IMG/VR virus record: IMGVR_UViG_3300001460_000004
Location: 166,037 to 230,036 of that record
Strand: one strand, 5' to 3'
Length of the DNA: 64,000 bases
A model generated the notes under the pieces. The model was not told where the DNA came from, made no database searches, and saw nothing but the letters and a program-made list of their open reading frames with translations. The translations under genes were made by a program, and so were the position numbers. Each line of letters begins with the position of its first letter. The stretch's first letter is position 1. Shown in pieces: positions 4,458-62,589 of the stretch.

Positions 4458-5184
4458 TATTGTATTCAAACCCTTTATTACGTATGCGTTCTAATACAGT
4501 ATCAAATACAGTACCATCATCCCCAATAGATATTAGTATTACATTAGGAGATTGGTAAGTTAATCCGGTTAAACGCCCGTCCTTTAAGGCACAATTTATT
4601 AATTGATGATCATGTGGACCAAACCAAAATTGATTTTGTATTTCTTCTTCAGAATTGGCTATTATCTCTAACCGTTTTCCACTAGTTGCATGTGGTAAAA
4701 GTGATCGGCAGTGCAAGTGTATCCGACTTTCAGTTCCATAATTTTGTGCAGTATGTGTTAAGCCAGTGTCCATTAAACTCCAAACACCGTTAACAGGCAT
4801 ATGGTGTATAGTTTGATTATCAAAGTCCATCATAACAGCTAGTGGATTTGTAGTAATAGCTAAGTGATACCGATCATCTTGATCACTGTGGGCACCGTAA
4901 TACCTACGTGGATCTAGTTTTCTTAAATAGGCACCACCAACTGGTCCTAATAAATTTAATGCATCTCCAACAGGAGTATTTTCAAATTCTGGTAACAACA
5001 CATATGGATCGTTTACATTTAAATTGGCTCCTGGTTTGACAACTGCATCGCTACCATCTGGGGCAGTGTTTACTTTGTATGCCCATCCATTGTCTTTACC
5101 ATTTGCCCATGGCATATTTAACACTTGCTCTATGAGCAAAGCTGTGTTAATATTAGCTAAGTGTGTTAGAGGTGTGAGTAGCAT
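4444..5184 (-). CDS. Asp/Asn beta-hydroxylase-like 2OG-Fe(II) oxygenase
   Basis: HSD...H facial triad (GAHSDQD...THTAQN) and R-I-H-L; start moved to ATG 5184, which has TAAGTA 5 nt upstream. Confidence 0.65.
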   Translation of the reverse strand: MLLTPLTHLANINTALLIEQVLNMPWANGKDNGWAYKVNTAPDGSDAVVKPGANLNVNDPYVLLPEFENTPVGDALNLLGPVGGAYLRKLDPRRYYGAHSDQDDRYHLAITTNPLAVMMDFDNQTIHHMPVNGVWSLMDTGLTHTAQNYGTESRIHLHCRSLLPHATSGKRLEIIANSEEEIQNQFWFGPHDHQLINCALKDGRLTGLTYQSPNVILISIGDDGTVFDTVLERIRNKGFEYNITDF

Positions 5185-5189
5185 GTTAG

Positions 5190-5195
5190 TACTTA
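5190..5195 (-). promoter_or_regulatory. Late-promoter variant TAAGTA, 5 nt before ATG 5184
   Basis: Same geometry as the six exact TAAATA-N5-ATG cases. Confidence 0.5.
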
Positions 5196-5202
5196 TTAAG
5201 AA

Positions 5203-5877
5203 ATGAAATACAAGTGTAAATATTGCAAAAAAGAATTTCAAAGGGAGAATACTCTTGCAGTGCATGTGTGCGAAAAGAAACGTAGATATTTAAATCGTAA
5301 CGAACCTGGGGTATTAATTGGCTACAAGGCATATCTACGTTTCTATGAAATAACACAGGGCAGTAAAAAAACAAAAACATATGAAGAATTTAGTAACACT
5401 GCATATTACAGAGCATTTGTAAAGTTTGGTTATTCTTGCAGAGACATTAGATGTGTTAACATTGTACAGTTTACAGAATGGCTAATCAAACATAATAAAA
5501 AATTAGACAATTGGTGCAGTGACCGATTGTATACTGAATTTCTTGAGGTGTACTTAACAGTAGAAAGTGTAAACGATGCACTCACTCGAGCAATTGAAGA
5601 AAGCATACGCTGGAATGAAAAAACTGGTAATCCAACACATGATTATTTGCGTTATGGAAATATAAATGAATTGTGTTATGCAGTTACAACAGGTAGAATA
5701 AGTGGATGGGTGTTGTATAACTGTAATAGCGGCCAGGAGTTGTTGACTAAGTTAAATAAAGAACAAATTGAAATGCTTTGGCCATGGATTACTAGTGATA
5801 TTTGGGCTAAAAAGTTTAAAGAGTATCCAGAAGATATGAAATATGCAAAACACATACTTAAAACAGCAGGTTGGTAA
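5203..5877 (+). CDS. Conserved phage protein with an N-terminal C2H2/C2HC-like zinc finger
   Basis: YKCKYCKKEF...LAVHVC. Confidence 0.7.
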   Translation: MKYKCKYCKKEFQRENTLAVHVCEKKRRYLNRNEPGVLIGYKAYLRFYEITQGSKKTKTYEEFSNTAYYRAFVKFGYSCRDIRCVNIVQFTEWLIKHNKKLDNWCSDRLYTEFLEVYLTVESVNDALTRAIEESIRWNEKTGNPTHDYLRYGNINELCYAVTTGRISGWVLYNCNSGQELLTKLNKEQIEMLWPWITSDIWAKKFKEYPEDMKYAKHILKTAGW

Positions 5878-6863
5878 TGATACTAATTGATTTTCCAGGT
5901 GGTGCACACGGCAACTATGTTGAATACATTTGCAATAGATTTCTAGCCGGAGTAAAAACCAATCCTAGTCCTTTTAAAAGCAGTGGTGTGAGTCATGCCA
6001 AAGAATACTATAGTCCAATTAAATTTGAGGCTAAACATTATTTTCAATTTGAACCCAAAAGTGTGCTAGGTAGTACCCTAATTTCAATACAAGTAAAACA
6101 GCAACATTTGATGCAATTAATAGCGATCAATTTTTTACGTGCAGGCGAAGGAAATATTGATGTAAGAAAATTAGAAGATACACTGTATGATAGGTTAAAA
6201 GTTACCAACACTGGAATGATTGATAGCATACGCAAGAATTATATCAACCAAAGTATACTTGGATACAAAGATATCAAGGATCCTAAGTGGCCCAATTGTG
6301 ATAGTATAGAAGAATATCATCAATTACCACAGTACATTAAAAAAGAATTAACTGAACTACACAACTTTGAATTTTGGGAGTTTGATGAAAACAACCCTTA
6401 TTGTCCACGATGGATAATGAGAGATTATTTTTATCAAGGATTTATGGCCGAAGAAAACAGCGGTTTTTGGCAGTTTTGTTTAACACAAGAACGTGTGCGT
6501 CAAACAGCCCAACAAAGTTTGAGCATTGATTTTATGGATTTGTATAATATAGATAGTTTCACAAATATTGTACAGCAAATTGCTAACTTTACTGGGTATA
6601 CATTTGAAGAGACACAAGAGTTTAGAAACATACATCAAACATTTTTAAATAACCAACCTTTTAAAAACAGCTACAATTTTTGTAGTATGTTAATTACCGA
6701 TATTATTAATAACCAAATTGATAAATTACCAGAACTTGATGTCTTGCAAGAAGGTTATATCTGTGCTAAACTATGTAAACATTATGACACCACTGTAGAT
6801 TTAAGCGATGCCAGAGACTGGTTTAAAACATCAATATTACTTAAAGGATTTGTAAATGATTAA
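5871..6863 (+). CDS. Hypothetical protein (possible sulfotransferase/P-loop-like fold) with an inserted DPxWPxC module
   Basis: 330-aa ORF; 34-aa segment shared with the protein at 11938. Confidence 0.6.
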   Translation: MVMILIDFPGGAHGNYVEYICNRFLAGVKTNPSPFKSSGVSHAKEYYSPIKFEAKHYFQFEPKSVLGSTLISIQVKQQHLMQLIAINFLRAGEGNIDVRKLEDTLYDRLKVTNTGMIDSIRKNYINQSILGYKDIKDPKWPNCDSIEEYHQLPQYIKKELTELHNFEFWEFDENNPYCPRWIMRDYFYQGFMAEENSGFWQFCLTQERVRQTAQQSLSIDFMDLYNIDSFTNIVQQIANFTGYTFEETQEFRNIHQTFLNNQPFKNSYNFCSMLITDIINNQIDKLPELDVLQEGYICAKLCKHYDTTVDLSDARDWFKTSILLKGFVND

Positions 6864-7708: not shown

Positions 7709-8065
7709 CATAATACTACGGCGCCTACCTTTGTTACGTTGTATATTCTTTAAACTACACACAGGACCATGAATTATTTGTAGATGTTTGTTGCTAAAAG
7801 TTTTTAAACAAAACTTAAATGGTTCCCAATCCTTCTTTAAAAACAAGTTTATTGGTATACTTCGATTGCTCTCCCACCACCATTGATGTGCTAATTCTAA
7901 GTATTCTTCCTTGAGTCCTCTTTCGATTACATCACCAAAGTCATATATGCTTGTTAGCGTATCGCCTCGATTTTGTATTACGCCTATGTGTTCATTTCCC
8001 ACATAGTCGACAAGGCTCAAGAAGGGGTAATTTTGGTTTAGTTTGTTAAAGACATTGTTTACCAT
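7688..8065 (-). CDS. Conserved phage hypothetical protein
   Basis: 125-aa ORF filling the gap between convergent and divergent genes. Confidence 0.7.
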   Translation of the reverse strand: MVNNVFNKLNQNYPFLSLVDYVGNEHIGVIQNRGDTLTSIYDFGDVIERGLKEEYLELAHQWWWESNRSIPINLFLKKDWEPFKFCLKTFSNKHLQIIHGPVCSLKNIQRNKGRRRSIMLVRKVD

Positions 8066-8070
8066 AAATA
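8065..8070 (+). promoter_or_regulatory. T4-type late promoter TAAATA followed by SD AAGGAG
   Basis: Lies upstream of structural-type gene 8088. Confidence 0.55.
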
Positions 8071-8087
8071 TTATAAGGAGTTCCTAG

Positions 8088-8867
8088 ATGTATGCAGCTA
8101 CAGTATATTTATACCAACAAATTCAGAAGGTCTTACTTGTGGACAACTCTGATGGAAGTTACTTTGACCGGAGGTGGAGTGAAGTGTATTCAAAAAAATT
8201 AAAATTAAATTTAGGAGTCGATAATGTTATTTTGTTTGCATTTGAAAATCAAGATCAAAAACCAGTAAACATTTCAGGCAGTACATTCACATTTCGTCTC
8301 ATAAGCCAAAATGGTGAACAGTTACTATTAGCCAAAGAGTTAGTTAGTCTCAATAATGCCAAAGGACGTGCTAAAGTTACCATTACCAGTGCTGACATAA
8401 ACACATTATTTGAGCAACCTGCTAGTTGGAGTATTGAGCAAGCAAGTGGTAATCTTGAAACCGCAGTATTAGTAGATGCATACAGTGGTGCTCGCGGAGA
8501 CATTGAAGTTAATAACAGTGTGTATCCTGCATTTGTGCCCAGCAAAACATTAACTATTCCTGCACAAGCGCCAGACAGTACAATTTATTATACTAGCACA
8601 GTAACAACAGAAGGTGTAGACCAAACAACATTTGTAGTAACTCCTAATGGATTCACAGGAGAGATAAGAGTTAATGGTGCAGTTGATACTAGCGGTGATT
8701 GGTATGATATTACTTTTGTAGACTTTTCAACACAAGCAACTGTTGACGAAGTGCAACTTGTCAATAGCAGTGATTTAATTGGACTCAACGTCCCAGGATA
8801 TCATCCCTATTTGCGTTTAGAATTTGTTATAAGTGCAGGAAGCATTAGCAACATACTTTATCGATAA
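8088..8867 (+). CDS. Putative virion/baseplate protein (BppU-N-like)
   Basis: Beta-rich composition, GVDNVILF...DQKPVNISG pattern, late promoter and SD. Confidence 0.5.
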   Translation: MYAATVYLYQQIQKVLLVDNSDGSYFDRRWSEVYSKKLKLNLGVDNVILFAFENQDQKPVNISGSTFTFRLISQNGEQLLLAKELVSLNNAKGRAKVTITSADINTLFEQPASWSIEQASGNLETAVLVDAYSGARGDIEVNNSVYPAFVPSKTLTIPAQAPDSTIYYTSTVTTEGVDQTTFVVTPNGFTGEIRVNGAVDTSGDWYDITFVDFSTQATVDEVQLVNSSDLIGLNVPGYHPYLRLEFVISAGSISNILYR

Positions 8868-10552: not shown

Positions 10553-11941
10553 ATGCTTAAAGAATACAATCTCGATGTACAGAAATTGTTTTTAGAAATG
10601 ATGTTAGAAGATGCACAAAGTTATGTGCGTATTCAAAACATATTCAATCCAGAAAACTTTGATCGAAGCTTGATCGAAGTAGCTAAGTTCATTAAAGATC
10701 ATTGTGATGATTACAAAACAATGCCAGAGATAGCTCAGATAAACTCCAGCACTGGCGTGACACTAAGTCCAGTACCTGATCTCAACAGTGGACACTTTGA
10801 ATGGTTTATGACCGAGTTTGAAAACTTTACTAAAAGACAAGAACTTGAACGAGCAATACTAAAAGCTGCAGACTTATTAGAAAAAGGTACGTATGAGCCA
10901 GTTGAAAAACTTATCAAAGATGCAGTACAAATAAGTTTGACACGTGATTTAGGAATAAATTATTTTGATGATCCACGTGCCAGGCTAACTGCTTTAAAAA
11001 ACAACAATGGTCAAAACAGCACAGGCTGGAAAGCACTTGATAAAATGTTGTATGGTGGGTTTAACAGAGGCGAACTACAAATATTTGCAGGCGGATCGGG
11101 CTCGGGCAAGAGTTTGGTTATGCAAAATTTAGCAGTTAACTGGATACAAGCAGGACTCAATGGTGTGTACATTACACTAGAATTAAGTGAAGGCTTAACT
11201 GCAATGCGTGTTGATAGCATGTTAACGGGCACCAGTAGCAAAGACATTTTTCGAGAGTTAGATAATGTTGAAATGAAAATTAAAATGGCTGGCAAAGCAA
11301 GTGGGCAACTACAAGTCAAGTACATGCCAGCACAAAGCAATGTAAATGACATTAGGGCGTATTTAAAAGAATTAGAAATACAAAGTGGTTACAAAACAGA
11401 CTTTTTGTTAGTTGACTATCTAGACTTATTGATGCCGGTTAGTGCAAAAGTTAGCCCAAATGATCAATTTATTAAAGACAAGTATGTAAGCGAAGAACTA
11501 CGCAATTTAGCAAAAGAGTTAAATGTATTGTTTGTAACAGCATCGCAATTAAATCGTAGTGCAGTTGAAGAAATTGAATTCGACCACAGTCATATTGCTG
11601 GTGGTATTAGTAAAATTAATACAGCAGATAATGTGTTTGGTATATTTACTAGCAGGGCAATGCGTGAACGTGGGCGATATCAGATACAAGCAATGAAAAC
11701 ACGTAGTAGTAGTGGAGTTGGACAAAAAATTGATTTAGATTTTGATATAGCTAGTTTAAGAATTATGGATTGCGATGAAGATGCACAGCAAAGCAGTAGC
11801 GGGCATGGTAACATATACGAAAGCATTAAAGCAACAACAAATGTTAACGACACAAGTAGTCCAGTTACCGAAACTCGAAAAGTTGAAGCAGATGTGCAAA
11901 GTAGTAAACTTAAAGGCTTGCTAGCATCAATGAAATCATGA
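10553..11941 (+). CDS. gp41: Replicative DNA helicase (gp41/DnaB-like)
   Basis: GGSGSGKS Walker A, YITLEL, VDYLDL, TASQLNR. Confidence 0.92.
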   Translation: MLKEYNLDVQKLFLEMMLEDAQSYVRIQNIFNPENFDRSLIEVAKFIKDHCDDYKTMPEIAQINSSTGVTLSPVPDLNSGHFEWFMTEFENFTKRQELERAILKAADLLEKGTYEPVEKLIKDAVQISLTRDLGINYFDDPRARLTALKNNNGQNSTGWKALDKMLYGGFNRGELQIFAGGSGSGKSLVMQNLAVNWIQAGLNGVYITLELSEGLTAMRVDSMLTGTSSKDIFRELDNVEMKIKMAGKASGQLQVKYMPAQSNVNDIRAYLKELEIQSGYKTDFLLVDYLDLLMPVSAKVSPNDQFIKDKYVSEELRNLAKELNVLFVTASQLNRSAVEEIEFDHSHIAGGISKINTADNVFGIFTSRAMRERGRYQIQAMKTRSSSGVGQKIDLDFDIASLRIMDCDEDAQQSSSGHGNIYESIKATTNVNDTSSPVTETRKVEADVQSSKLKGLLASMKS

Positions 11942-12795: not shown

Positions 12796-13900
12796 GTTCT
12801 TCGGATTCTTTTACAGCACTATCATCGCTGTTGTATGGCTTACCTATCCCGTTTTCTGCAACCCATTCGTTATACCAACCAGCAACTTCATCAAAGTTTT
12901 TAATCATTAATTTTTTTTCAGCCATAGTTTGTAATTTTATAGGCATTCCGGTTACTAATGCACCACGATCGGTTAGCTCTTTGATTGCTAGAAAACTTTT
13001 GGTGTATGCTTTGCTATTGTTTAACAAGTACTGTTGATCAGTATTGCTTAAACTTTGAATAATACCATTACGAGTGCTAGTATCATCTGGCACACTTAAT
13101 TGAAAGTTTGGTTTGTTACTTTTATCTTCTAACAGCAATGTTGGTTCTACTTGTTTACTAAGTCCACTTATATCTCCCAGCAAGTAATGACATCGATTCC
13201 AGTCTTCAAATTCAATGCCAAATATATCATTCCAGTTACGTTTTTCTTGATGATTAAAGCAAGGTAATTCTAAACAAAATTCTTCAGCTCGAGGCATGTC
13301 TTGCTCGTAAACAAAGTAACTACCAACAGTAAAATATTGATCTACCCACTCTAAGTATTTTGCATAGTCTTGAAGATATTTTATTAAACTCATGCGAGGA
13401 ACTTTAATTTTTATACTGTAAAGGTCTTCGTAGTAATCTGCTTTATCTAATGGGTTGTAAACATTAAGTTTGTCACTGCGGGTTACAATAACCCAACTTA
13501 GTGCATGTTCAAACAAATTTTCTCTTTGGGCACTAATAATATAAAAATGTTCATTTAGATATTTGTAAAATTCAACTTGTTGTGCAATTGGGTCATTGCG
13601 ATTGCGAATATGATATTGTGCTAATCTGCTAGTTTTATAATGATCTACACTGCTTAGTAAATCTGTTATTTCGCTAAGTGTTTGATGATATCCTCTAGGT
13701 TGGTCAATTCTTTCTGGCTTTCCAAGAATTTCACTATTGTATTCTGGGCTAAAGTATCGTATAATACCATTAGTAAGTTCGTGTAAGTTTATTACTGGAC
13801 GATCGTATTTGTGTGCATTCATTAAAATAGTCAGTAATCTTTGCAAAAAAGTACTGCCAACTCGATCTGGAGTTAATATTAATACATTGTTATGGTTCAT
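12689..13900 (-). CDS. Sulfotransferase-like protein
   Basis: N-terminal TPDRVGSTFL resembles the PAPS 5'-phosphosulfate loop; 403 aa. Confidence 0.5.
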   Translation of the reverse strand: MNHNNVLILTPDRVGSTFLQRLLTILMNAHKYDRPVINLHELTNGIIRYFSPEYNSEILGKPERIDQPRGYHQTLSEITDLLSSVDHYKTSRLAQYHIRNRNDPIAQQVEFYKYLNEHFYIISAQRENLFEHALSWVIVTRSDKLNVYNPLDKADYYEDLYSIKIKVPRMSLIKYLQDYAKYLEWVDQYFTVGSYFVYEQDMPRAEEFCLELPCFNHQEKRNWNDIFGIEFEDWNRCHYLLGDISGLSKQVEPTLLLEDKSNKPNFQLSVPDDTSTRNGIIQSLSNTDQQYLLNNSKAYTKSFLAIKELTDRGALVTGMPIKLQTMAEKKLMIKNFDEVAGWYNEWVAENGIGKPYNSDDSAVKESEELRKWHCSQLLNSPTDQQNVQQLTDHSDDRPEQDLI

Positions 13901-13905
13901 GATAA

Positions 13906-13913
13906 TATTTATA
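13906..13913 (-). promoter_or_regulatory. Full T4 late consensus TATAAATA, 5 nt before ATG 13900
   Basis: Plus-strand TATTTATA. Confidence 0.75.
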
Positions 13914-18587: not shown

Positions 18588-18618
18588 AAAGGCTCAGTTT
18601 TTACTGGGCCTTTTTTTT
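18588..18618 (+). terminator. Rho-independent terminator
   Basis: AAAGGCTCAG-TTTTTA-CTGGGCC followed by T8. Confidence 0.85.
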
Positions 18619-18624: not shown

Positions 18625-18630
18625 TAAATA
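18625..18630 (+). promoter_or_regulatory. Late promoter TAAATA, 5 nt before ATG 18636
   Basis: TAAATA-CTGTT-ATG just after the terminator, no SD. Confidence 0.7.
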
Positions 18631-18635
18631 CTGTT

Positions 18636-19046
18636 ATGCATACTATCACACTTTATACACGTTTTGACATCACGTATACTGGAATCAGACAACATCATAG
18701 TAAACTGATACCGACTACAGATCGCAGCGGTTATGAAATTTCTACACTGTTACAATTTAATGTTAGTCGTAGTCAACAAAGTAATTGGGAAACAATTAAT
18801 CAACTTATAAGTTTACGTACATTACCGGATAACATCAAAGATCCAGTAGTGGACACAGTTGATGGTAAAAAAGTGTGGAGATTTAGCTTTGATGTATCAA
18901 ATCTTGATGCAATTGGCTCAGAAGACACTCCACTTAGTATGTTAATTGGCGATTGTAAAGGTACACCATTTATAACGGGACTTACAGAAGAGACTTCTGA
19001 TATTACTATCTCAGATAAAAACACTTGGTTTAAGATAAGTAATTGA
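18636..19046 (+). CDS. Conserved phage hypothetical protein
   Basis: 136-aa ORF. Confidence 0.7.
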   Translation: MHTITLYTRFDITYTGIRQHHSKLIPTTDRSGYEISTLLQFNVSRSQQSNWETINQLISLRTLPDNIKDPVVDTVDGKKVWRFSFDVSNLDAIGSEDTPLSMLIGDCKGTPFITGLTEETSDITISDKNTWFKISN

Positions 19047-31352: not shown

Positions 31353-31358
31353 TAAATA
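31353..31358 (+). promoter_or_regulatory. Late promoter TAAATA, 5 nt before ATG 31364
   Basis: TAAATA-TTGTC-ATG, no SD. Confidence 0.7.
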
Positions 31359-31363
31359 TTGTC

Positions 31364-33913
31364 ATGATATTAATATTCTTAACTTTAATTACTGCATTAG
31401 CTTTAAGTGCAGTTGCAGCATTCTATAGTATAGTAGGTTTAACAACTATATTTGCAGCCAGTATACTGCCTGTTATTATTATGGCAAGTATACTCGAAGT
31501 TGGGAAACTTGTAACAACAGTTTGGCTACACGAAAACTGGCATCGTGTAAGATTTTTCATGCGTGTGTATTTGTGTATAGCAGTTGTCATATTAATGATC
31601 ATTACTTCAATGGGTATATTTGGGTTTCTAAGTAAAGCACACATTGAACAAGCAAGTAATGCAGCTCAAGGACAAGCACAAATTGAAAGAGTTGTCAGTG
31701 AAATTGAGCTTCAAGAAAACGTAATTGTACGAGCTAACAACCAAATTGAAAAACTTGAAGGACAAAGCACTAATACTAATATCAGCATACAAGAACAAAT
31801 TGCAGACGAACAAGCAAGAATTGACACCCAATACTCACGCATACAACCAGCAATTGATGAACAAAACAATATTATTGCAGACACTAGAGTTGATGATCTA
31901 GCACGTACTAACCCATACGAACAACAATTGGTTAGTTTATCAGATGAATTAAAAACTTTTAATGAACAAATACAAACATACGAAAGCAGTCTCAAAGAAG
32001 TTGGCAAAGACACCGCTAGCATTGATGCCAGCGTAAAGCCATATGAAGATACATTAAATAGTACTGCTGATGATGCAATACGTCCATATGTGGATCAAAT
32101 TGCTAGTATTAATAGAGATATTGAAAGTTTACAAAATTTAACAGCTAGTGGTAACAGAGAAGATATTAAACGAGCACAACAGTTAGTTGGTATAAGTGCA
32201 GATGGTATTTTTGGTACCGGCAGTGCTAGAGCAACTGATGAATGGAAAGACAAACAAGCACAGCGTATTGCTGAACTAAGTGCAACTATAACTGATTTAC
32301 GCCAACAACACCAATCTAAAATTGCTCAAGCAAGTAGTACTATTACCCAACTACGCAAAGAATTTGAAGATGGGGTAAGAAACGAGCGATCTCGTATAAC
32401 TGGTTTAATTAATGATATACAAAACGTACAAATACCTGCACTTAAAACTAGAGAGCTAGAAGTACTAGCAACCATTGACAATGTTAGAAGTACAGAATCA
32501 CCTATTATTATCCAAGCACGTGAAGAGATTGTTCGTATTAGATATGCAGCCAATCAAAACATAGAAGCCAGTCAAAAAATAATTGAACAACTACGAGATA
32601 AAATACAGATTGGTAGTACTGCAGAACAAGATGAATTAATTGATGCACAACGTTTGCGTATTACTACAGCAAACACACTAGTTGAACAACTAACTGACGA
32701 AAAATTTGCACTTGAGACCGAAGCAAGGGCATTTGAGGCTGAAGTAGGACCAGTTAAGTACATAGCAGCTTTGATATACGAAGACGGCGGCACTACTGAA
32801 TCTTTAGAAGATGCAGTGCGTTGGGTTATTATTATGTTGGTATTTGTATTTGATCCATTGGCAATTATGTTACTATTAGCTGCAACTGAAACAATATCTT
32901 GGCGTAGAAAAGAAAAACAACAGCAATTAGTAGATACACCACTTGAGACTAAACTAGAATCTAAAGAAGAAATAGTGTTTGAAGATGTTGACCAAGACAC
33001 ATTAGCCAAAGAAGCTGCCAATGAGGCCCAGCTTATTGAAGATGATATAGCCGAAGAAAAAAAACGTGAACAAGCTAGAGCCCAGGCTATAATTGATAAC
33101 CCTGGTTATCCCCCAAAAGAAAAGGATAATGACGATGTACCACAGGTTCACGTTAGCCGCAATGATGATCCAGTACCTTTTACTGAAACAACTGGAAGAG
33201 AACCCGACGGAGAAGGAGAAATAGATGGAACAGTGGTGGAACCTACAGACAGCAATATACAAGATGGTGATGTGGAACTTGATGAACGAGATCGAGAAGC
33301 CGATGATGCGGAAGGTCTATCAGGACGGAGCGATGTGGAACCTGCAGAAGAACAAGTACCTGACAGTGACCAAACCGAAGAAAGAACTAGTACCGAGCAG
33401 GACACCGGAGGAAGTGCTACAGCATCTGAACAGGTAGAAGGAGATATTACAGAAGAAAAAGATTGGGAAACATTAGCTAATGAAGCCGAAGCTATTGAAG
33501 GAAGTAACAATGTTCTTAAACAAGCAAAGCAGTTATGGAAACAGGATAACCCAGCCGAAACGTTAAAATTTGAACGTATAAAATTTATGCAAGGATTAAT
33601 TACAGACTTACCCTGGATGGAGTATATTGACGATCCACGTATTAATCGAGAAGTAAAATATGGTTCTGAATATCCAGCTGATGCATTACGAGGTGACTTG
33701 TTTATTAATACAAAACAAATACCAAGTAGTTTACACAAATTTAATGGTGAAAAGTGGATAAGTGTAAATAAACTTACTACAGACCAGTATGCATATAACA
33801 GTCAATACATTCAGTATTTGATTGGCCAAATAAGCGCCGGTGTGTACGACCCCGAACTGCTAACTGATAGCGAACGATCAATGATTGAGACACAATTGCA
33901 AAAAGATATGTAA
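31364..33913 (+). CDS. Large membrane protein: 3 TM helices, long coiled coil with peptidoglycan-binding-like motif, TM helix, acidic tail
   Basis: Hydropathy pattern; AQQLVGISADGIFGTGSARA. Confidence 0.7.
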   Translation: MILIFLTLITALALSAVAAFYSIVGLTTIFAASILPVIIMASILEVGKLVTTVWLHENWHRVRFFMRVYLCIAVVILMIITSMGIFGFLSKAHIEQASNAAQGQAQIERVVSEIELQENVIVRANNQIEKLEGQSTNTNISIQEQIADEQARIDTQYSRIQPAIDEQNNIIADTRVDDLARTNPYEQQLVSLSDELKTFNEQIQTYESSLKEVGKDTASIDASVKPYEDTLNSTADDAIRPYVDQIASINRDIESLQNLTASGNREDIKRAQQLVGISADGIFGTGSARATDEWKDKQAQRIAELSATITDLRQQHQSKIAQASSTITQLRKEFEDGVRNERSRITGLINDIQNVQIPALKTRELEVLATIDNVRSTESPIIIQAREEIVRIRYAANQNIEASQKIIEQLRDKIQIGSTAEQDELIDAQRLRITTANTLVEQLTDEKFALETEARAFEAEVGPVKYIAALIYEDGGTTESLEDAVRWVIIMLVFVFDPLAIMLLLAATETISWRRKEKQQQLVDTPLETKLESKEEIVFEDVDQDTLAKEAANEAQLIEDDIAEEKKREQARAQAIIDNPGYPPKEKDNDDVPQVHVSRNDDPVPFTETTGREPDGEGEIDGTVVEPTDSNIQDGDVELDERDREADDAEGLSGRSDVEPAEEQVPDSDQTEERTSTEQDTGGSATASEQVEGDITEEKDWETLANEAEAIEGSNNVLKQAKQLWKQDNPAETLKFERIKFMQGLITDLPWMEYIDDPRINREVKYGSEYPADALRGDLFINTKQIPSSLHKFNGEKWISVNKLTTDQYAYNSQYIQYLIGQISAGVYDPELLTDSERSMIETQLQKDM

Positions 33914-36053: not shown

Positions 36054-36059
36054 AACAAA

Positions 36060-36879: not shown

Positions 36880-37658
36880 TCAATCTCAACTCTCAGAGGA
36901 TTATAAGGATCTTGTAACCATTTACTTCCAGTACGACCACGTGGGTTAGAAAAAAAGTTAGTATATGCTACTTGGTCAACAACTTTGTTATGATAATGAC
37001 CAAAGCACCAAGTTTTAATTTTTTGTTCAGTATCAACTTGAAACACCAAAGGCATATGATTGTTAACACTTGTATTAATGCGATAATGTTGATTCATATC
37101 CGGATCATCTTTAATAAATCTTCCCATTGGTAAAAAATGTGTAACACAAACTATATGTTTAACATCAGGCATTTTTTGAAGTTTACTTATACTTCTTTCC
37201 ATATACTGTGCATCGCTCCAGGCTCTAGCTTGTATTTCAGTAGTAACATCACGTGATATATCATAATTTTTTTCCATACCCAGCATACATTCCTCAGTTG
37301 AAAATCGTTGATCATAATCCATACTGTACCAACCGTTAGTACCAACAAAAGCAACACCTTCAAGAGTAGTTACGTTGTTGTGCATATTAACAACATTAGG
37401 TATTTTTCTAATTAGGTTGTCTAATTCGTGATAACTACTGATGAGATCATTGTAAGTATAACGATGTTCTTCATTACCATCAATGTAGAGTACCAAATGA
37501 TATTGCTCACTGATGTGTTTTAGTGTATTATATAGTTTAGTGCGATCAAGAGAAACATCGCCTGCTATAACACAAAGACGAGAGGTAGCTTTGTTAGACC
37601 AATTAAAATCCCAATCGTCTACGTGTAAGTCACTTATTAAATCGAATGAATCAAGCAT
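36876..37658 (-). CDS. Calcineurin-like metallophosphoesterase
   Basis: SDLH, AGD, GNEEH, THFLP, FGHYH. Confidence 0.85.
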   Translation of the reverse strand: MLDSFDLISDLHVDDWDFNWSNKATSRLCVIAGDVSLDRTKLYNTLKHISEQYHLVLYIDGNEEHRYTYNDLISSYHELDNLIRKIPNVVNMHNNVTTLEGVAFVGTNGWYSMDYDQRFSTEECMLGMEKNYDISRDVTTEIQARAWSDAQYMERSISKLQKMPDVKHIVCVTHFLPMGRFIKDDPDMNQHYRINTSVNNHMPLVFQVDTEQKIKTWCFGHYHNKVVDQVAYTNFFSNPRGRTGSKWLQDPYNPLRVEID

Positions 37659-37663
37659 AATAC

Positions 37664-37669
37664 TATTTA
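37664..37669 (-). promoter_or_regulatory. Late promoter TAAATA, 5 nt before ATG 37658
   Basis: Plus-strand CAT-AATAC-TATTTA. Confidence 0.7.
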
Positions 37670-45862: not shown

Positions 45863-46706
45863 AACTAGCAACATCACTCATACGATTTACTAGAAATGGT
45901 TGCTGGTCATAACTTTCATTAATAATTCCATCAAATGTTTTAAAACCTAACTTTCTCAAATTTTTTAAATAATGTTGGCCACTAGCAACAACAAACGGAC
46001 GTTTAGCCAATATAGGTTTTACTATTTTTTCTGTAAAAAAACTAAATTCATTATCGCTTTGTGTTTCGGCAACAACTGTACTATGAGTAAGAGCATAGAT
46101 GTCGTGCGGTAATATTTGACTTAAACTTACAATAACACCATCTACTGTTACTTCATCAACTGTTTGGTATATGTTGGATTGTTGGGGGAGAATACTAGGC
46201 CAAACAAATTCTTTATCTGAAAGTTGTGCAATATCGTTGTTGTTATATTCTTTAAAATATTTTACAATGTTTTGTGATGTACCCATGTAATGTTTTAAAA
46301 GATCTCTGTGATATTTTTTTCTTCCTAGTAGTGCATCAAATCCGTTGGTACCATGTTTGGTTTCTAAGTGGCGTGGAAACTGTTTGTAAAAAGCTATAGT
46401 GCTATCAAAAAAATACATATAAGTTTTTACAACAGCATCCCGGGTTTGGTAGTTTAAATAACCAGGAATAAAAATAGTAACATTAGGCAAGTCAAATTTA
46501 TCAATTAATGCAGTTGATGTTAATTCTTGTAAAAACAACAACACAGGTTTACCGGTGTTAACAAATGGCATTATATTTGCAAAATCATTGTCTTGATATT
46601 CAATAATCTCAATTATTGCAACATCCCAAATGTTGTCCTCAGTGATAGTATAAGTGGTTTGATTAAGCCACCATTTTACTTGTTCTGATTGCGTATATAC
46701 TAACAT
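45720..46706 (-). CDS. Glycosyltransferase-like protein (GT10-like family)
   Basis: VVAETQ...FTEKIVKPILAKRPF...GFKTF...NESYD. Confidence 0.6.
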   Translation of the reverse strand: MLVYTQSEQVKWWLNQTTYTITEDNIWDVAIIEIIEYQDNDFANIMPFVNTGKPVLLFLQELTSTALIDKFDLPNVTIFIPGYLNYQTRDAVVKTYMYFFDSTIAFYKQFPRHLETKHGTNGFDALLGRKKYHRDLLKHYMGTSQNIVKYFKEYNNNDIAQLSDKEFVWPSILPQQSNIYQTVDEVTVDGVIVSLSQILPHDIYALTHSTVVAETQSDNEFSFFTEKIVKPILAKRPFVVASGQHYLKNLRKLGFKTFDGIINESYDQQPFLVNRMSDVASSILAVNQLDVDHYLAQCKPIVEHNFQLMFETDWVALIVSDIVDTIEN

Positions 46707-46711
46707 ATTGA

Positions 46712-46717
46712 TATTTA
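46712..46717 (-). promoter_or_regulatory. Late promoter TAAATA, 5 nt before ATG 46706
   Basis: Plus-strand CAT-ATTGA-TATTTA. Confidence 0.7.
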
Positions 46718-50086: not shown

Positions 50087-50102
50087 TATTTACCAATAAA
50101 TA
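50087..50102. promoter_or_regulatory. Back-to-back late promoters (TATTTA-CCAA-TAAATA); the + box is 5 nt before ATG 50108
   Basis: Lies between divergent genes. Confidence 0.65.
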
Positions 50103-50107
50103 TCTGT

Positions 50108-51043
50108 ATGCATAGATTTGAAATTAAAGCATCTGGTGATAGATTTACTAATCCAACAGAGTTTACTAAATGGCTAAGTGAAGTTCCAGATGATGCCCGA
50201 TTAGTATTGGACATGCAAAGTGAGGCACCATGTTTAGAAATATTAGGTATTGTTGCACAAATAAAAGATAGAGATTTTATTGTGCTGAATTACCCCAATG
50301 CACATCGAGATTGTACATATCCTACTGTAGGAGAACACCATGTAAGTCATTTTTGGTGGCTTAGTGAAAGATATGATCGCGGTACATTTTCTTGGAACAA
50401 AAATTATGTATTTGGTTGTTTTATAGGTAGGAAAACACTAGCAAGATGTGTTATACTATATGAGATGCAAAATTATAGATGCATATCAAGTTTAATGGAC
50501 AAAGAACCTGGGCCCTGGATTGTTAAGCCAACAGGCACAGATTATGAAACTGTTGATGAATGGGATGCAAACTTAGATCAATTCTTTTACGGATTTGATT
50601 TTGATAGTATTAAAAGCATCGATGACCACGAAGTTCGAGACCAATATAATAGTAAATACAATACAAACAGAGATATACTTAATTGGTACCATGATTTTTT
50701 AGTTGAAGTGAGTGCGGAAACATACACTTTGGGTAAAACTTTTTTTGTTACTGAAAAAACAGTTAGACCATTATTGAGTGGCAAAGGTTTAATAATGTAT
50801 GCACCAATTGGGTATATGCAACATCTAAGAGATTTAGGATTGAAAACATTTGATACACTTTGGAACGAAGATTACGACAATTACCAAGGATCAGAAAGAT
50901 GGCATCGTATGCAACACTCGATAAATCAACTTGGAATGATGAGTCACAATCAATTGCATGATTTAGATGTTGAAATACAAAAAATAACTCAACATAACAG
51001 GACTGTAATTGCTAACATAATTGAAAAGAATAAACCACAATGA
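50108..51043 (+). CDS. Glycosyltransferase-like protein (GT10-like family)
   Basis: VSAETY...VTEKTVRPLL...GLKTF...NEDYD. Confidence 0.6.
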   Translation: MHRFEIKASGDRFTNPTEFTKWLSEVPDDARLVLDMQSEAPCLEILGIVAQIKDRDFIVLNYPNAHRDCTYPTVGEHHVSHFWWLSERYDRGTFSWNKNYVFGCFIGRKTLARCVILYEMQNYRCISSLMDKEPGPWIVKPTGTDYETVDEWDANLDQFFYGFDFDSIKSIDDHEVRDQYNSKYNTNRDILNWYHDFLVEVSAETYTLGKTFFVTEKTVRPLLSGKGLIMYAPIGYMQHLRDLGLKTFDTLWNEDYDNYQGSERWHRMQHSINQLGMMSHNQLHDLDVEIQKITQHNRTVIANIIEKNKPQ

Positions 51044-52002: not shown

Positions 52003-53145
52003 ATGTTTTTTAGCATTAGCAGAGTACATGATCAACGTTTTCCATACCACACACCTTTAGGAGATACTCGTTGGATATGTTCACATGATGAAGGCTGGCA
52101 AGTTTATAACTCTCCCTCTGCACCGCTGCGGAAAGGCTATGTTGTTGGCAATCACAAAAATGCTAATAGTTTAACAATTACTATACATAAAGATAAAGTT
52201 ATACTACAACATGAAAACATGCGTAGTTTTCCACTGTGGTGGTATCCTAAACGTGCAGTATTAACCAATTTAAGTATACTTGATGAATTTAATGTTGAAA
52301 CAATATTTGTTGATCAACAAGTAACCTTGCAAGGACTTAGTTTAAAATTACACAAAATAGATCCACTTGGTGATATAACTCATATTAAACCTAACAGCAA
52401 AACCATTACCCAGGTTGTTAATGAAACAAAGTCAATACTAACAGAAACATGCATTGATTTCTTTACACAATACAAAAACGTTAATTTATTTGTTACTGGT
52501 GGCATTGACACAATGTTATTGCAAAGTATAATTGATTCTTCAGGGTTGCATTGTAACACAATTGATCGTGAACATTTTGAGTATGACTTGTTTACTAACA
52601 AAAACATAGAACAGCTACAAGAACTTCACTGGGCATACAAGCAAATACATCATTGGCGTGGTCCAAACATATTAATGACTGGGGGGTGCGGAGATGAGTT
52701 TATGATGCGTGGCCCAAACATGGTTGGGTTGTATTGTGCATGGCATAACATTGACATACTTGATATTTTACGATTAACTAAAAACCAGTATCATAGTGTT
52801 TATTATCTTAAAGATAAAAATGTTCGTGTGTTTGATGATCTTTGGAAAAATCGATGGGAATGGCAAGATCGACTCCCTACATATAAAGACTTAGTTGAGT
52901 ATATTCTCAATTATAATGCTAACGATCACCAGCATTGGCACCTTGGTAATACCCTTACATTTACGCCGTTTAAAAATATTGATCTTACTAAATTATTGTT
53001 GCAACTGAGTCCAGAGCAGCTAACAACACAATTTACTGATGCAAATGTAAACAAACAAATAATATATAACTTATCACCTAATAGACTTAAAGAAGTAAGC
53101 GAGTTTAAAAATATTATGACCCGGGGCAATCTTGTGGTTAAATAA
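52003..53145 (+). CDS. Asparagine-synthetase-like (PP-loop) ATP-dependent ligase
   Basis: LFVTGGIDT (cf. SGGxDS) and LMTGGCGDE (cf. GxGADE); no N-terminal catalytic Cys. Confidence 0.55.
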   Translation: MFFSISRVHDQRFPYHTPLGDTRWICSHDEGWQVYNSPSAPLRKGYVVGNHKNANSLTITIHKDKVILQHENMRSFPLWWYPKRAVLTNLSILDEFNVETIFVDQQVTLQGLSLKLHKIDPLGDITHIKPNSKTITQVVNETKSILTETCIDFFTQYKNVNLFVTGGIDTMLLQSIIDSSGLHCNTIDREHFEYDLFTNKNIEQLQELHWAYKQIHHWRGPNILMTGGCGDEFMMRGPNMVGLYCAWHNIDILDILRLTKNQYHSVYYLKDKNVRVFDDLWKNRWEWQDRLPTYKDLVEYILNYNANDHQHWHLGNTLTFTPFKNIDLTKLLLQLSPEQLTTQFTDANVNKQIIYNLSPNRLKEVSEFKNIMTRGNLVVK

Positions 53146-53149
53146 TTAT

Positions 53150-53224
53150 CTGAAGCGTGGCAGAGTGGTTATGCACTTCTCTAGGGGAGAAGACTACGGA
53201 GGTTCGAATCCCCCCTTCAGACCA
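53150..53224 (+). tRNA. Atypical tRNA with AGG anticodon (Pro-type) and irregular acceptor/T-stem junction
   Basis: D-arm GCA/TGC with GG, anticodon stem CTTCT/AGAAG with loop CT-AGG-GG, GGTTCGAATCC T-loop, CTGAAG/CTTCAG acceptor pairing, encoded ACCA. Confidence 0.75.
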
Positions 53225-60854: not shown

Positions 60855-60856
60855 GT

Positions 60857-61597
60857 TTAGTCCTTTGCATTACTTAAATATTTTATATATTCATTCATAC
60901 TATGGTCGTATAATCCATCAAAAGGTACACCTTTTTTAAAAGCACGCCAGCGTCCACGCCAGCTATCTTTTATACGTTGCCATTTTGTCATTTTACGAAC
61001 ATTACCAAAATAGTTTAGGTAAAATAATTCACCTACATGCTTGTACCCTAATAACCAAAACGGTACTTTTGTCACAACATCATTATTGTTTACTACTCTT
61101 ATTACTGGTACTGGGCATTTATAACTTTTACTTAAACTTGTTGCACGTGGTCCACCAAATGTAATAACATGCTTAACATTAAAATTTGGACCCGGGTCTT
61201 GTGGTTTACTAGCAAGATAATAAGATGCAACAACACTCATACCGCCACCTAAACTGTGTCCTGTAATTGTAACAGGCCGACTTTTCTTTTTGAGAAGCGT
61301 TTTTAATTCAATTTGTATTTTATTAATAAGTTTGTCTGCTTCAGTTTTAAATCCTGCATGAAACCCATTACTGTACCATGCTTTGGCATCAGCTGCAAGA
61401 TCGCTGATTTCAGACGGTTCGGTTCCTCTAAAACAAACAGTTATTTGATCCTTGTTGCTTACAATATATGCCTGAGCACCTTCATGTTCAATAAATTTAC
61501 TAACAGTATATCCTAATTTTTTAAATTTTGATCCACCTTTGTCCAAATAAGCCAATTGACTGCATTGAGCATAATGGTGTAATTTAGTTGCTTCCAT
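60857..61597 (-). CDS. Lipase class 3 (alpha/beta hydrolase)
   Basis: FRGTE, FHAGF, ITGHSLGG, FGGPR, NNNDVVTKVP, DHSM; start at the SD-preceded ATG. Confidence 0.9.
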   Translation of the reverse strand: MEATKLHHYAQCSQLAYLDKGGSKFKKLGYTVSKFIEHEGAQAYIVSNKDQITVCFRGTEPSEISDLAADAKAWYSNGFHAGFKTEADKLINKIQIELKTLLKKKSRPVTITGHSLGGGMSVVASYYLASKPQDPGPNFNVKHVITFGGPRATSLSKSYKCPVPVIRVVNNNDVVTKVPFWLLGYKHVGELFYLNYFGNVRKMTKWQRIKDSWRGRWRAFKKGVPFDGLYDHSMNEYIKYLSNAKD

Positions 61598-61632
61598 AAT
61601 TTTCTTGCTCTCCAACGAAGTTTGTGTTACTA

Positions 61633-61645
61633 TATTTAGTAAATA
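61633..61645. promoter_or_regulatory. Back-to-back late boxes TATTTA-G-TAAATA; a further TAAATA at 61668-61673 lies 4 nt before ATG 61678
   Basis: Lies between divergent genes. Confidence 0.55.
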
Positions 61646-61677
61646 ATACCTTAGATTAGGAGGCGCTTAAATACTAC

Positions 61678-62589
61678 ATGCTCACTGGCTTACACATCGA
61701 ACCCACAAACTTATGTACTCTCAAATGCGAAGGTTGTGCAAGAACTATATTTAGAAAACAATGGCTTAAACATTGGAAAAATTATAGTATTGATATTGTC
61801 AAACTACTACAATTTTTAGATATAAATCTCGATAACATGTTGATATATCTCTGTGGTAATTATGGAGATCCAATATATCATCCTAAATTTTATGAGCTTG
61901 TTACAGAACTTAAGGCACGTGGTGCCCAGTTAAAAATAACAACAAATGGTAGTTACAAGACAACAGCTTGGTGGAAAAAATTAGTTGCACAGCTAGATAA
62001 AAATGATACTATTGAATTTAGTATCGATGGTACACCTGAAACATTTACAAACTACAGAGAAAATGGTGACTGGAAAAGCATAAAACTAGGAATAGACGTA
62101 GCAACAGCGGCTAGTGTTCGCACAATTTGGAAGTATATTCCTTTTGCATTTAATGCCAATGACATTGATAATGTTGCCCAACTGAGTATAAAAATGGGGT
62201 TTGATGGATTTTTGTTAGACCGCAGTGATAGGTATGAGGGAGAACTTAGAGATTTGGCGCCAGACGATGAAAACTTAATACACCCAAGGGCCAAAGGAAG
62301 AGTTAAAGCCTTAGATGGAACAGCTGACATTGATGCAAAATGCGACAAAGGCAATATGCATTACATAAGTGCCGATGGTTACTATTCACCTTGTTGCTTT
62401 ATAGCTGATCATCGTTACTATTACAAAACACCTTTTGGAAAAAACAAAAACAATTACGGCATTGCCAATACAACAATAAGTAATATTTTAAAGCAGAATG
62501 ACACAGTTTCTTTCTACAAAAACATACACTTAACCAAACCATTATGTTGCACAATGAATTGTCCAAGGTTGAAAGGCACCAATGATTAA
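61678..62589 (+). CDS. Radical SAM protein with C-terminal SPASM/twitch domain
   Basis: CTLKCEGC, GNYGDP, TNG, SIDG, YISADGYYSPCC. Confidence 0.88.
   Translation: MLTGLHIEPTNLCTLKCEGCARTIFRKQWLKHWKNYSIDIVKLLQFLDINLDNMLIYLCGNYGDPIYHPKFYELVTELKARGAQLKITTNGSYKTTAWWKKLVAQLDKNDTIEFSIDGTPETFTNYRENGDWKSIKLGIDVATAASVRTIWKYIPFAFNANDIDNVAQLSIKMGFDGFLLDRSDRYEGELRDLAPDDENLIHPRAKGRVKALDGTADIDAKCDKGNMHYISADGYYSPCCFIADHRYYYKTPFGKNKNNYGIANTTISNILKQNDTVSFYKNIHLTKPLCCTMNCPRLKGTND

What the first reader, a model, noticed from the sequence alone, without database searches (positions are those of the whole stretch)
5184..61680. TAAATA-N5-ATG: late-promoter boxes that would produce leaderless mRNAs for stand-alone accessory genes
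Seen: six genes have TAAATA ending exactly 5 nt before the ATG with no SD (13900-, 18636+, 31364+, 37658-, 46706-, 50108+). One has TAAGTA at the same spacing (5184-), one has N4 spacing (61678+), and the tRNA 5' end at 53150 has the same N5 spacing. A rough chance estimate (hexamer p about 0.002 x about 100 genes) gives about 0.2 expected. Known: the T4 late box TATAAATA lies at about -13 to -6, so +1 falls on the A of ATG. Inference: an 11-nt signal gives both transcription and translation start, making each accessory gene a self-contained plug-in. That would explain their scattered, often antisense positions.
Basis: partly seen in the sequence, partly recalled or inferred. Interest (0 to 1): 0.72.

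Follow-up and report, generated by a model that had tools for sequence, protein, structure and literature searches.

The report
Late promoter fused to start codon
In this marine giant phage and its uncultured relatives, and also in the cultured SAR11 phage HTVC008M, about a quarter of the T4-type late promoter boxes sit exactly 5 bases before an ATG, so these genes are most likely expressed as leaderless mRNAs; no RNA data confirm this yet.

Summary
In the whole 230-kb contig, TAAATA-N5-ATG opens 13-14 long ORFs, against about 0.4 at neighbouring spacings (Poisson p about 1e-15). In an unbiased hexamer-by-offset scan it beats every Shine-Dalgarno hexamer.

- **Spacing.** It is bimodal: 4-7 nt, none at 8-12, then 13-60 nt with an SD.
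- **Start site signs.** The codon after the spacer is ATG (134, against 3 GTG). Position -1 is a pyrimidine in 97% of sites.
- **Sigma factor.** A gp55-like late sigma is encoded. No gp45 or gp33 was detected.
- **Conservation.** The arrangement holds in a 337-kb complete relative and in about 160 IMG/VR loci, for example the small gene after the portal and gp25. It recurs in Pelagibacter phage HTVC008M at annotated starts.
- **Controls.** T4 and PA5oct lack it.

The best explanation is that a T4-type late box at -11 to -6 places +1 on the A of ATG, giving leaderless late mRNAs. This is inferred; the public RNA runs were uninformative.

The "accessory plug-in" reading is only partly right. Core late genes use the arrangement too, and the antisense singletons have no terminators. 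They are, however, enriched at divergent junctions. I rate this a new variant of known kinds.

The parts
13898..13911 (-). TAAATA (13906-13911), 5-nt spacer, ATG (13900-13898). Starts a 403-aa ORFan (12689-13900), sulfotransferase-like by Atlas leads only. It is an antisense singleton, and its 3' end overlaps the neighbouring + gene by 107 nt.
   Evidence: coding score 104.8
18625..18638 (+). TAAATA (18625-18630), 5-nt spacer, ATG 18636. Starts a 136-aa ORFan (18636-19046). A strong intrinsic terminator (18588-18613 plus a T run) lies directly upstream. The G001 orthologue is SD-led.
31353..31366 (+). TAAATA (31353-31358), 5-nt spacer, ATG 31364. Starts an 849-aa protein of unknown function (31364-33913). 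A second, full TATAAATA box lies 40 nt upstream.
37656..37669 (-). TAAATA (37664-37669), 5-nt spacer, ATG 37658. Starts a 260-aa metallophosphoesterase (36876-37658). The intergenic region is 26 nt, and the box overlaps the SD of the divergent gene at 37685 on the other strand. The G001 orthologue has the box at spacing 6.
46704..46717 (-). TAAATA (46712-46717), 5-nt spacer, ATG 46706. Starts a 328-aa ORFan (45720-46706, coding score 65). Its 3' end overlaps the convergent endonuclease gene by 143 nt.
50097..50110 (+). TAAATA (50097-50102), 5-nt spacer, ATG 50108. Starts a 311-aa protein of unknown function, the first gene of a + strand block divergent from 48682-50046(-).
5182..5195 (-). Variant box TAAGTA (5190-5195), 5-nt spacer, ATG 5184. 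Starts a 246-aa cupin / Asp-Arg hydroxylase-like protein (4444-5184). The gap to the divergent gene at 5203 is 18 nt. TAAGTA is the only variant that recurs: at the terminase gene here and in G001, and at 6 sites with spacing 4-7 in G001.
61668..61680 (+). TAAATA (61668-61673), 4-nt spacer, ATG 61678. Starts a 303-aa radical SAM protein. This site is ambiguous: an upstream TAAATA at spacing 32, together with AGGAGG 14 nt before the ATG, could give a leadered mRNA.
53139..53224 (+). TAAATA (53139-53144), 5-nt spacer, then base 1 (C, 53150) of tRNA-Pro(AGG), with the CCA end encoded. It may be a tRNA transcript that begins at or next to its mature 5' end. Weak evidence.
884..921 (+). A second, sigma-70-type leaderless arrangement: TTGACA (884-889), 17 nt, TATAAT (907-912), 6 nt, ATG 919. 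Starts a 260-aa ORFan.
8065..8090 (+). Example of the leadered class in the window: TAAATA, 17 nt containing GGAG, then ATG 8088. With +1 six nt after the box, the mRNA would begin one base before the GGAG, at the A of AGGAG.

Best explanation
TAAATA is the core of this phage's late promoter: a T4-type '-10' box read by host RNA polymerase carrying the phage's gp55-like sigma, with no -35 element. In about a quarter of late transcription units the box ends 5 nt (range 4-7) before the ATG. RNA polymerase, which starts about 6 nt after the box and prefers a purine after a pyrimidine, would then initiate on the A of the start codon. The transcript would have no 5' UTR and no SD, and would be translated as a leaderless mRNA through its 5'-terminal AUG. 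The remaining late units carry the same box 13-60 nt upstream and use an SD.

Shown here: the positional enrichment, its conservation, the requirement for ATG, the pyrimidine at -1, the empty 8-12 nt zone, and the presence of a gp55 homologue.

Inferred: the position of the transcription start, dependence on gp55, late timing, and leaderless translation.
For: - **Enrichment and rank.**
- **Bimodal spacing.** Of 57 genes with a box within 60 nt upstream, 15 have k<=7, none has k=8-12 and 42 have k=13-60. Relatives show the same pattern: k=4 25, k=5 35, k=7 10, almost none at 8-14, and a second peak at 16-21.
- **Start codon.** After TAAATA-N5, with at least 60 open codons downstream: ATG 134, the next codon 12, GTG 3.
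- **Position -1.** It is T or C in 97% of 104 unique sites. In this genome the figure is 15/16, against 97/235 for other genes (p = 3e-5). In G001 it is 25/27 across spacings 4-7.
- **No upstream element.** No -35 element is conserved; position -12 is A in 59% of sites.
- **Sigma factor.** gp55-like sigma: phrog_12791 at E = 1.6e-73, and T4 gp55 at E = 9.5e-6.
- **Late genes.** The box precedes the sheath, baseplate and head genes.
- **Orthologues keep the box next to the ATG while the flanks diverge.** 77 of 78 post-portal genes have it at k=4-7, including about 19 in which the portal stop codon is not part of the box. gp25-like genes have it in 53 loci. In G001 the orthologues of p114, the cytidylyltransferase, the phosphoesterase, the 448-aa virion protein and the terminase all keep it.
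- **Controls.** T4 and PA5oct have 0-1 sites at k=4-7 and only the leadered hump.
- **Independent lineage.** HTVC008M has 12 sites at k=5. All seven that fall in the 15-kb stretch inspected coincide with RefSeq CDS starts.
- **Geometry.** The T4 box spans -13 to -6 (PMC2988020).
Against: - There is no RNA evidence. The only RNA-type run holds a few low-depth contig pieces, with no information on 5' ends.
- No gp33 or gp45 homologue was found here or in the complete relative G001, although the gp45 model finds T4 and HTVC008M. The polymerase complex therefore cannot be assumed to be T4-like in detail.
- Spacings of 4-7 nt mean that either the start-site choice is flexible or some mRNAs carry 1-2 nt leaders.
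- For co-directional cases such as the post-portal gene, the TAA of the box is often the stop codon of the upstream gene. Termination-reinitiation on a polycistronic mRNA could therefore also serve these genes.
- The host is unknown, so its ability to translate leaderless mRNAs is untested.
Confidence: 0.72

Rival explanations
1. The box is a promoter, but transcription starts 1-3 nt away from the A of ATG or at several positions. The mRNAs would then carry very short leaders rather than being strictly leaderless.
For: Spacings of 4, 6 and 7 nt are used as well as 5: in G001 k=4 has 9 sites and k=7 has 5; the portal genes of one subclade use k=7.
Against: At every spacing from 4 to 7, -1 is a pyrimidine and +1 is the A of ATG (25/27 in G001). 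That is what start-site selection on that A predicts. Spacing 5 dominates in this genome and in HTVC008M.
Confidence: 0.12
2. TAAATA-N5-ATG acts at the RNA level, either as an A/U-rich translation signal or as a stop-restart junction that uses the TAA, on polycistronic transcripts. On this view it is not a promoter.
For: In about 57 of 78 relatives the portal stop codon is the TAA of the box in front of the next gene. In this genome the terminase stop codon abuts the next box.
Against: - Half of the sites lie at divergent junctions, with no upstream gene on the same strand.
- The box is kept when the upstream stop codon lies elsewhere.
- The same hexamer sits at variable, longer distances before SD-led late genes.
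- One copy abuts a tRNA.
- It matches the T4-family late box, and a gp55 homologue is present.
Confidence: 0.06
3. The box is read by the host's own sigma factor rather than by the phage gp55-like protein. The genes would then not be specifically late.
For: Leaderless arrangements also occur behind perfect TTGACA-N17-TATAAT promoters: 2 in this genome and 4 in G001. Leaderless expression as such is therefore not tied to the late sigma.
Against: TAAATA lacks the -7 T of a sigma-70 -10 element and comes with no -35. The phage's sigma-70-type promoters form a distinct, canonical class. The box clusters in front of virion genes.
Confidence: 0.08
4. The pattern is chance, a composition effect or a gene-calling artefact.
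For: The genome is AT-rich (36% G+C).
Against: Poisson p = 1e-15. Dinucleotide shuffles give 8.8 +/- 2.8 TAAATA-N5-ATG sites of any kind, almost none of which would open a long ORF. The test does not depend on gene calls. The pattern is conserved in relatives of 44-46% G+C and coincides with RefSeq starts in HTVC008M.
Confidence: 0.01

Closest known systems
Bacteriophage T4 late promoters (TATAAATA at -13 to -6, read by gp55 with gp33 and the gp45 clamp)
   Same: The core hexamer is the same. There is no -35 element. A gp55 homologue is encoded. The box precedes virion genes. The box-to-start geometry fits the spacing seen here.
   Different: T4 has no box at 4-7 nt from a start codon; its late mRNAs have SD-bearing leaders. 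Here only (A)TAAATA is conserved, not the first TA. No gp33 or gp45 is detectable. The sigma is about 313 aa, against 185 aa in T4.
Predicted ATAAATA late promoters of RaK2-like jumbo phages (CBB, GAP32)
   Same: These belong to the same wider phage group (portal identity 44-51%). The motif is the same, a gp55-like sigma is present, and no gp33 or gp45 was found (PMC5259590).
   Different: That paper does not mention placement next to the start codon or leaderless mRNAs. A RaK2-like genome (fHe-Yen9-04) and PA5oct show no enrichment at spacing 5.
Leaderless transcripts of Thermus phages phiYS40 and Lalka27a, and '-10 adjacent to ORF' expression in Deinococcus-Thermus
   Same: A promoter -10-type element lies a few nt before the start codon, so that the 5' end of the mRNA is the initiator codon. 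This was shown by experiment (bioRxiv 10.64898/2026.04.20.719267; PMC12340547).
   Different: The hosts, the sigma factors and the motifs are different (for example TAGGGT for late genes in Lalka27a). In those phages most transcripts are leaderless. Here about 6% of genes and about 26% of late units are, alongside normal SD-led genes.
Lambda cI mRNA from PRM (the classic leaderless phage mRNA)
   Same: Transcription starts on the A of the AUG, and translation proceeds without an SD. This rests on established knowledge, cited within PMC12340547.
   Different: That is a single regulatory gene expressed from a sigma-70 promoter, not a genome-wide class tied to a late sigma.

Membership tests
T4-type late transcription system | Short A/T box of the TATAAATA type about one helical turn upstream of +1, with no -35 element | tested here: met
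   TAAATA is the fixed search pattern. In the flanks of 104 unique sites, -12 is A in 59%, -13 is not conserved, and nothing is conserved from -14 to -31. TAAGTA is the only variant that recurs.
T4-type late transcription system | Phage-encoded gp55-family sigma | tested here: met
   Genome 81652-82647(+): T4 gp55 at E = 9.5e-6; phrog_12791 at E = 1.6e-73 and phrog_234 at E = 2.5e-23. No Pfam hit.
T4-type late transcription system | gp45 sliding clamp acting as activator | tested here: not met
   T4 gp45 protein, PF02916 and PF09116 find nothing in this contig, and the T4 gp45 protein and PF09116 find nothing in the complete relative G001. PF09116 scores 175 bits in T4 and 64 bits in HTVC008M. 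This contig is only about 66% complete, but G001 is complete.
T4-type late transcription system | gp33 co-activator | tested here: inconclusive
   T4 gp33 finds nothing in this contig or in G001. gp33 is short and poorly conserved (PMC2988020), so a miss is weak evidence.
T4-type late transcription system | Box precedes late (virion) genes | tested here: met
   The sheath gene, the baseplate and head modules, the terminase gene and portal-neighbour genes carry the box within 60 nt upstream. Expression timing itself was not tested.
Leaderless mRNA | The 5' end of the primary transcript is the A of the start codon | not testable with these tools
   The only RNA-type public run gave low-depth contig pieces with no 5'-end information.
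Leaderless mRNA | Promoter -10-type element 4-7 nt upstream of the start codon, with no room for an SD | tested here: met
Leaderless mRNA | AUG strongly preferred as the start codon | tested here: met
   ATG 134, against GTG 3, after TAAATA-N5 with a long open frame.
Leaderless mRNA | Start-site signature: pyrimidine at -1, purine at +1 | tested here: met
   97% pyrimidine at -1; 15/16 against 97/235 for other genes, p = 3e-5; 11/12 in HTVC008M.
Self-contained accessory cassette ('moron'-like plug-in) | Own promoter and own terminator | tested here: not met
   A promoter box is present. No terminator-like site follows the antisense singletons at 4444, 12689, 36876 or 45720. The counts of terminator-like sites equal the shuffle expectation. 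The 3' ends overlap neighbouring genes by 4-143 nt.
Self-contained accessory cassette ('moron'-like plug-in) | Patchy presence among relatives, and restriction to accessory genes | tested here: inconclusive
   The 403-aa, 849-aa and cupin genes have no start-aligned homologue in G001 or the portal-region loci, and IMG/VR scans with the 403-aa and 849-aa proteins found no relative beyond one identical copy of the 403-aa gene. But the terminase, gp25, post-portal and virion-protein genes use the same module.

The most novel reading that the evidence does not exclude
Two T4-like lineages of marine phages that differ in gp45 content and in nearest cultured relatives have both fused the late-promoter box to the start codon for a quarter or so of their late units. 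One is this jumbo clade, which has no detectable gp45. The other is the gp45-bearing pelagiphage HTVC008M. If this is a convergent adaptation to alphaproteobacterial hosts (SAR11-like) whose ribosomes handle 5'-AUG mRNAs well, a 14-nt promoter-plus-start module would be a general way for these phages to fit genes into gaps of 18-50 nt. It might also let them begin a tRNA at its mature 5' end without RNase P processing.
Probability: 0.3. Interest if true: 0.7.

Novelty: new variant of a known kind. Interest (0 to 1): 0.6.

Why it matters
T4-type late transcription and leaderless translation are each well known, but I found no report that links them. The papers on RaK2-like phages, PA5oct and the pelagimyophage-related phage Melnitz that I searched predict late boxes or other promoters without noting this placement.

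If confirmed, three things would follow.
- Start-codon calls and promoter annotation would improve for a large, globally distributed group of uncultured marine jumbo phages. More than 590 IMG/VR stretches matched each of the portal and gp55 queries.
- It would point to hosts that translate 5'-AUG mRNAs efficiently.
- It would give a compact 14-nt expression module.

HTVC008M grows on Pelagibacter ubique HTCC1062, so the prediction can be tested directly.

Tried and rejected
- **Public RNA data.** Two run searches found mostly DNA-type (inferred) marine and brine metagenomes, one small RNA-type run (share 0.05) and one run of unknown type. Laying them on window 31700-37699 gave only low-depth contig pieces and no 5' ends.
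- **Conservation of the window's ORFans.** IMG/VR scans with the 849-aa and 403-aa proteins found no relatives, apart from one identical copy of the 403-aa gene. Conservation was therefore tested on genes shared with G001 and on portal- and gp55-region loci.
- **Host via the tmRNA tag.** The pattern for the first ten residues of the tag (ANDNYAPAMA) found nothing. The shorter ANDNYAPA pattern hit 40 genomes, about 30 of them Alphaproteobacteria or Pseudomonadota MAGs. That narrows the host to a class only.
- **Phage ribosomal protein S21** as a possible translation modifier: none found.
- **Broader distribution.** Raw pattern counts show no enrichment in S-PM2, Syn9, phiM12, Phosso, Vibrio phage 2.275.O or fHe-Yen9-04. 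Atu_ph07 is marginal, at 15 against 9. These are coarse counts, and the late motifs of those phages were not determined.
- **Other pelagimyophages** (Mosig, Melnitz) did not appear among the top hits, so they were not tested.
- **PHROG and Pfam scans** of most window genes returned nothing. Atlas hits are leads only.

Full report
**What the window is.** The window is bases 166037-230036 of a 230,036-bp IMG/VR virus contig with 36% G+C, estimated 66% complete by CheckV. Near-identical DNA occurs in marine and brine metagenomes. The phage is a T4-superfamily jumbo myovirus.
- The portal, sheath, baseplate wedge, terminase and SbcC-like genes hit T4-type PHROGs.
- The portal is 44-51% identical to those of Sinorhizobium phage Phosso, Pseudomonas phage PA5oct, Agrobacterium phage Atu_ph07 and the RaK2-like phages.
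- No gene caller was available, so I wrote one: a periodic Markov model trained on long ORFs. It gave 251 genes covering 94% of the contig. About half the genes have a clear SD such as AGGA or GGAG, so the host uses SD-led initiation.

**The observation.**
- Without gene calls, TAAATA-Nk-ATG on both strands of the contig gives 17 sites at k=5, of which 14 open ORFs of at least 50 aa. Other spacings give about 4.5 sites and about 1 such ORF.
- Counting only the first ATG of long ORFs, k=5 has 13 against a neighbouring mean of 0.42. Poisson p is 1e-15 for the contig and 3e-9 for the six window sites.
- In an unbiased scan of all hexamers at all offsets from 0 to 30, TAAATA at offset 5 ranks first, ahead of the SD hexamers.
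- TAAATA is depleted in the genome: 227 copies against 392 +/- 18 in shuffles. It is 8-fold concentrated in the 60 nt upstream of starts.

**Evidence that the box is a promoter with +1 on the A of ATG.**
1. Spacing is bimodal. Of 57 genes with a box within 60 nt upstream, 15 have it at 7 nt or less, none at 8-12 nt and 42 at 13-60 nt. Leaders of 3-7 nt can neither hold an SD nor present a 5'-AUG. The empty zone is what a start about 6 nt after the box predicts.
2. After TAAATA-N5 with a long open frame, ATG occurs 134 times, the next codon 12 times and GTG 3 times.
3. Position -1 is a pyrimidine in 97% of 104 unique sites. In this genome the figure is 15/16, against 97/235 for other genes (p = 3e-5). 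In the relative G001 it is 25/27 across spacings 4-7. This is the usual pyrimidine-purine preference at a bacterial transcription start.
4. No -35 element is conserved, and -12 is A in 59% of sites.
5. The T4 late box occupies -13 to -6 (PMC2988020), so a box ending 5 nt before the ATG puts +1 on the A.
6. A gp55-family sigma is encoded at genome 81652-82647.
7. The same box precedes SD-led sheath, baseplate and head genes.

**Conservation and controls.**
- In 79 IMG/VR loci around the portal gene of relatives (924 kb, 45% G+C, portal identity 67-75%), spacing 5 has 122 sites, 108 of them with long ORFs. Background is 5-10.
- The small gene after the portal keeps TAAATA at spacing 4-7 in 77 of 78 loci. 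These include about 19 in which the portal stop codon is not the TAA of the box.
- In 80 loci around gp55 (1.23 Mb), k=4 has 25, k=5 has 35 and k=7 has 10. Almost nothing falls at 8-14, and a second peak lies at 16-21. Thirteen protein families are involved, led by gp25.
- A complete 337-kb relative, G001, has 27 such starts at k=4-7. Its orthologues of five of this phage's leaderless genes keep a TAAATA box at k=4-7, although the proteins are only 42-54% identical. The terminase orthologue (69% over the aligned part) keeps the TAAGTA variant at k=7. One orthologue has switched to an SD.
- T4 and PA5oct, analysed the same way, show only the leadered hump, with 0-1 sites at k=4-7.
- Raw counts are not enriched in fHe-Yen9-04, Vibrio phage 2.275.O, Phosso, S-PM2, Syn9 or phiM12, and are marginal in Atu_ph07.

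**An independent cultured case.** Pelagibacter phage HTVC008M is a 147-kb T4-like phage that does encode gp45. It shows the same spike.
- It has 12 first-ATG long ORFs at k=5, again the top hexamer-by-offset combination, with a pyrimidine at -1 in 11 of 12.
- In the 15-kb stretch I inspected, all seven sites coincide with RefSeq CDS starts. The products are annotated as 2OG-Fe(II) oxygenase, CsgF, a cyclase, a putative tail tape measure, DNA end protector, head closure and baseplate tail tube cap.
- I found no paper that describes this placement.

**Which genes use it.**
- *Core late genes:* large terminase (variant TAAGTA-N5), a 448-aa virion protein, the 76-aa post-portal protein, and gp25 (N4).
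- *Accessory genes:* three radical SAM proteins, a metallophosphoesterase, a cupin/hydroxylase-like protein, and a cytidylyltransferase-plus-cupin protein.
- *ORFans:* several. One is sulfotransferase-like by Atlas leads only.
- Eight of 16 lie at divergent junctions, against 26 of 235 other genes (odds ratio 8, p = 3e-4). Intergenic gaps are as short as 18-26 nt. At 37658 the box overlaps the SD of the opposite gene.
- The antisense singletons have no terminators, and their 3' ends overlap neighbouring genes.
- The compactness idea therefore has support. The 'self-contained accessory plug-in' idea is too narrow.

**Leaderless starts are not confined to the late class.** Perfect TTGACA-N17-TATAAT promoters sit 6 nt before an ATG at window 919 and at genome 52992(-), and at four genes in G001. 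This suggests a host that translates 5'-AUG mRNAs readily. The phage carries an alphaproteobacterial-type permuted tmRNA (RF01849, 132 bits). The start of its tag occurs mainly in alphaproteobacterial genomes. HTVC008M's host is also an alphaproteobacterium. The link to the host is inference.

**Limits.**
- There is no direct evidence for the transcription starts.
- gp45 and gp33 were not detected here or in G001, as reported for RaK2-like phages (PMC5259590). The activation mechanism may therefore differ from T4's.
- For co-directional genes, restart after the upstream stop codon could contribute.
- Site 61678 has an alternative leadered route, and 31364 has a second upstream box.
- The tRNA-Pro case is a single instance with a predicted +1 of C. 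Loosely similar arrangements occur at G001 tRNAs.

**Verdict.** The leaderless-late-promoter reading is well supported in silico, with a confidence of about 0.7. The restriction to accessory genes is not supported. This is a new variant of known kinds: the T4 late promoter combined with promoter-adjacent leaderless expression, as seen in Thermus phages and in Deinococcus-Thermus.

Noticed in passing
outside the window: genome 15190-15538 (L001:15190-15538); also G001 at about 196894: The phage encodes a permuted, alphaproteobacterial-type tmRNA (RF01849, 132 bits; tag ANDNYAPAMAIAA). Its promoter region combines TTGACA-N17-TATAAA with an overlapping full TATAAATA box. Two-piece tmRNAs in marine phages have been reported before (PMC9004378).
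   Followed up: partly
window 53150-53224; L001:5808-5897: Two phage tRNAs have A at the wobble position: tRNA-Pro(AGG) and tRNA-Ser(ACT). To my knowledge this is unusual in bacteria outside tRNA-Arg(ACG). The tRNA-Pro scores only 32.6 bits in Rfam.
   Followed up: no
window 61678-62589; genome 7546-8766(-), 82607-83782, 84798-85934, 87755-88783, 165792-166937: Many radical SAM / SPASM-like paralogues are scattered through the genome. Several are inserted between the gp55, gp47-like (metallophosphoesterase-like by N-terminal motif only) and gp46-like (SbcC) genes. Three have leaderless-type starts, and 23 related loci (22 portal-region loci and G001) carry homologues. The assignment rests on Pfam/PHROG hits for three of them and on Cys-rich N-terminal motifs read by eye for the others.
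   Followed up: partly
window 11938-13900 and 44690-46706: Convergent gene pairs overlap at their 3' ends by 107 nt and 143 nt. In both pairs the minus-strand member is a leaderless-type ORFan with a good coding score.
   Followed up: partly
window 37659-37684: This 26-nt divergent intergenic region does two jobs. The late box of the minus-strand gene is the reverse complement of the stretch that holds the AAGGAAAG SD of the plus-strand gene. HTVC008M 18916/18943 has two back-to-back leaderless starts 26 nt apart, with boxes on both strands.
   Followed up: yes
outside the window: genome 81652-82647: The gp55-like sigma is about 313 aa, against 185 aa in T4. The gp55 homology lies in the C-terminal part (residues about 205-305). 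Relatives align from residue 18-20 onwards, so the real start is probably the ATG of the sequence MTKSPKR. No gp33 or gp45 was found. Whether the extra N-terminal part replaces them is unknown.
   Followed up: partly
outside the window: genome 56335-70848(-): A single 4837-aa ORF lies next to the baseplate wedge genes.
   Followed up: no
window 29291 and 39333(-): Two more genes without an SD have -10-like hexamers next to the ATG: TATAGT-N6-ATG and TAGTAT-N5-ATG, each with a weak -35-like hexamer. They may be further sigma-70-type leaderless starts.
   Followed up: no
window 8065-8090; relatives' peak at spacing 16-21: The leadered late units have very short predicted leaders of 11-16 nt. The leader would begin essentially at the SD.
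   Followed up: partly
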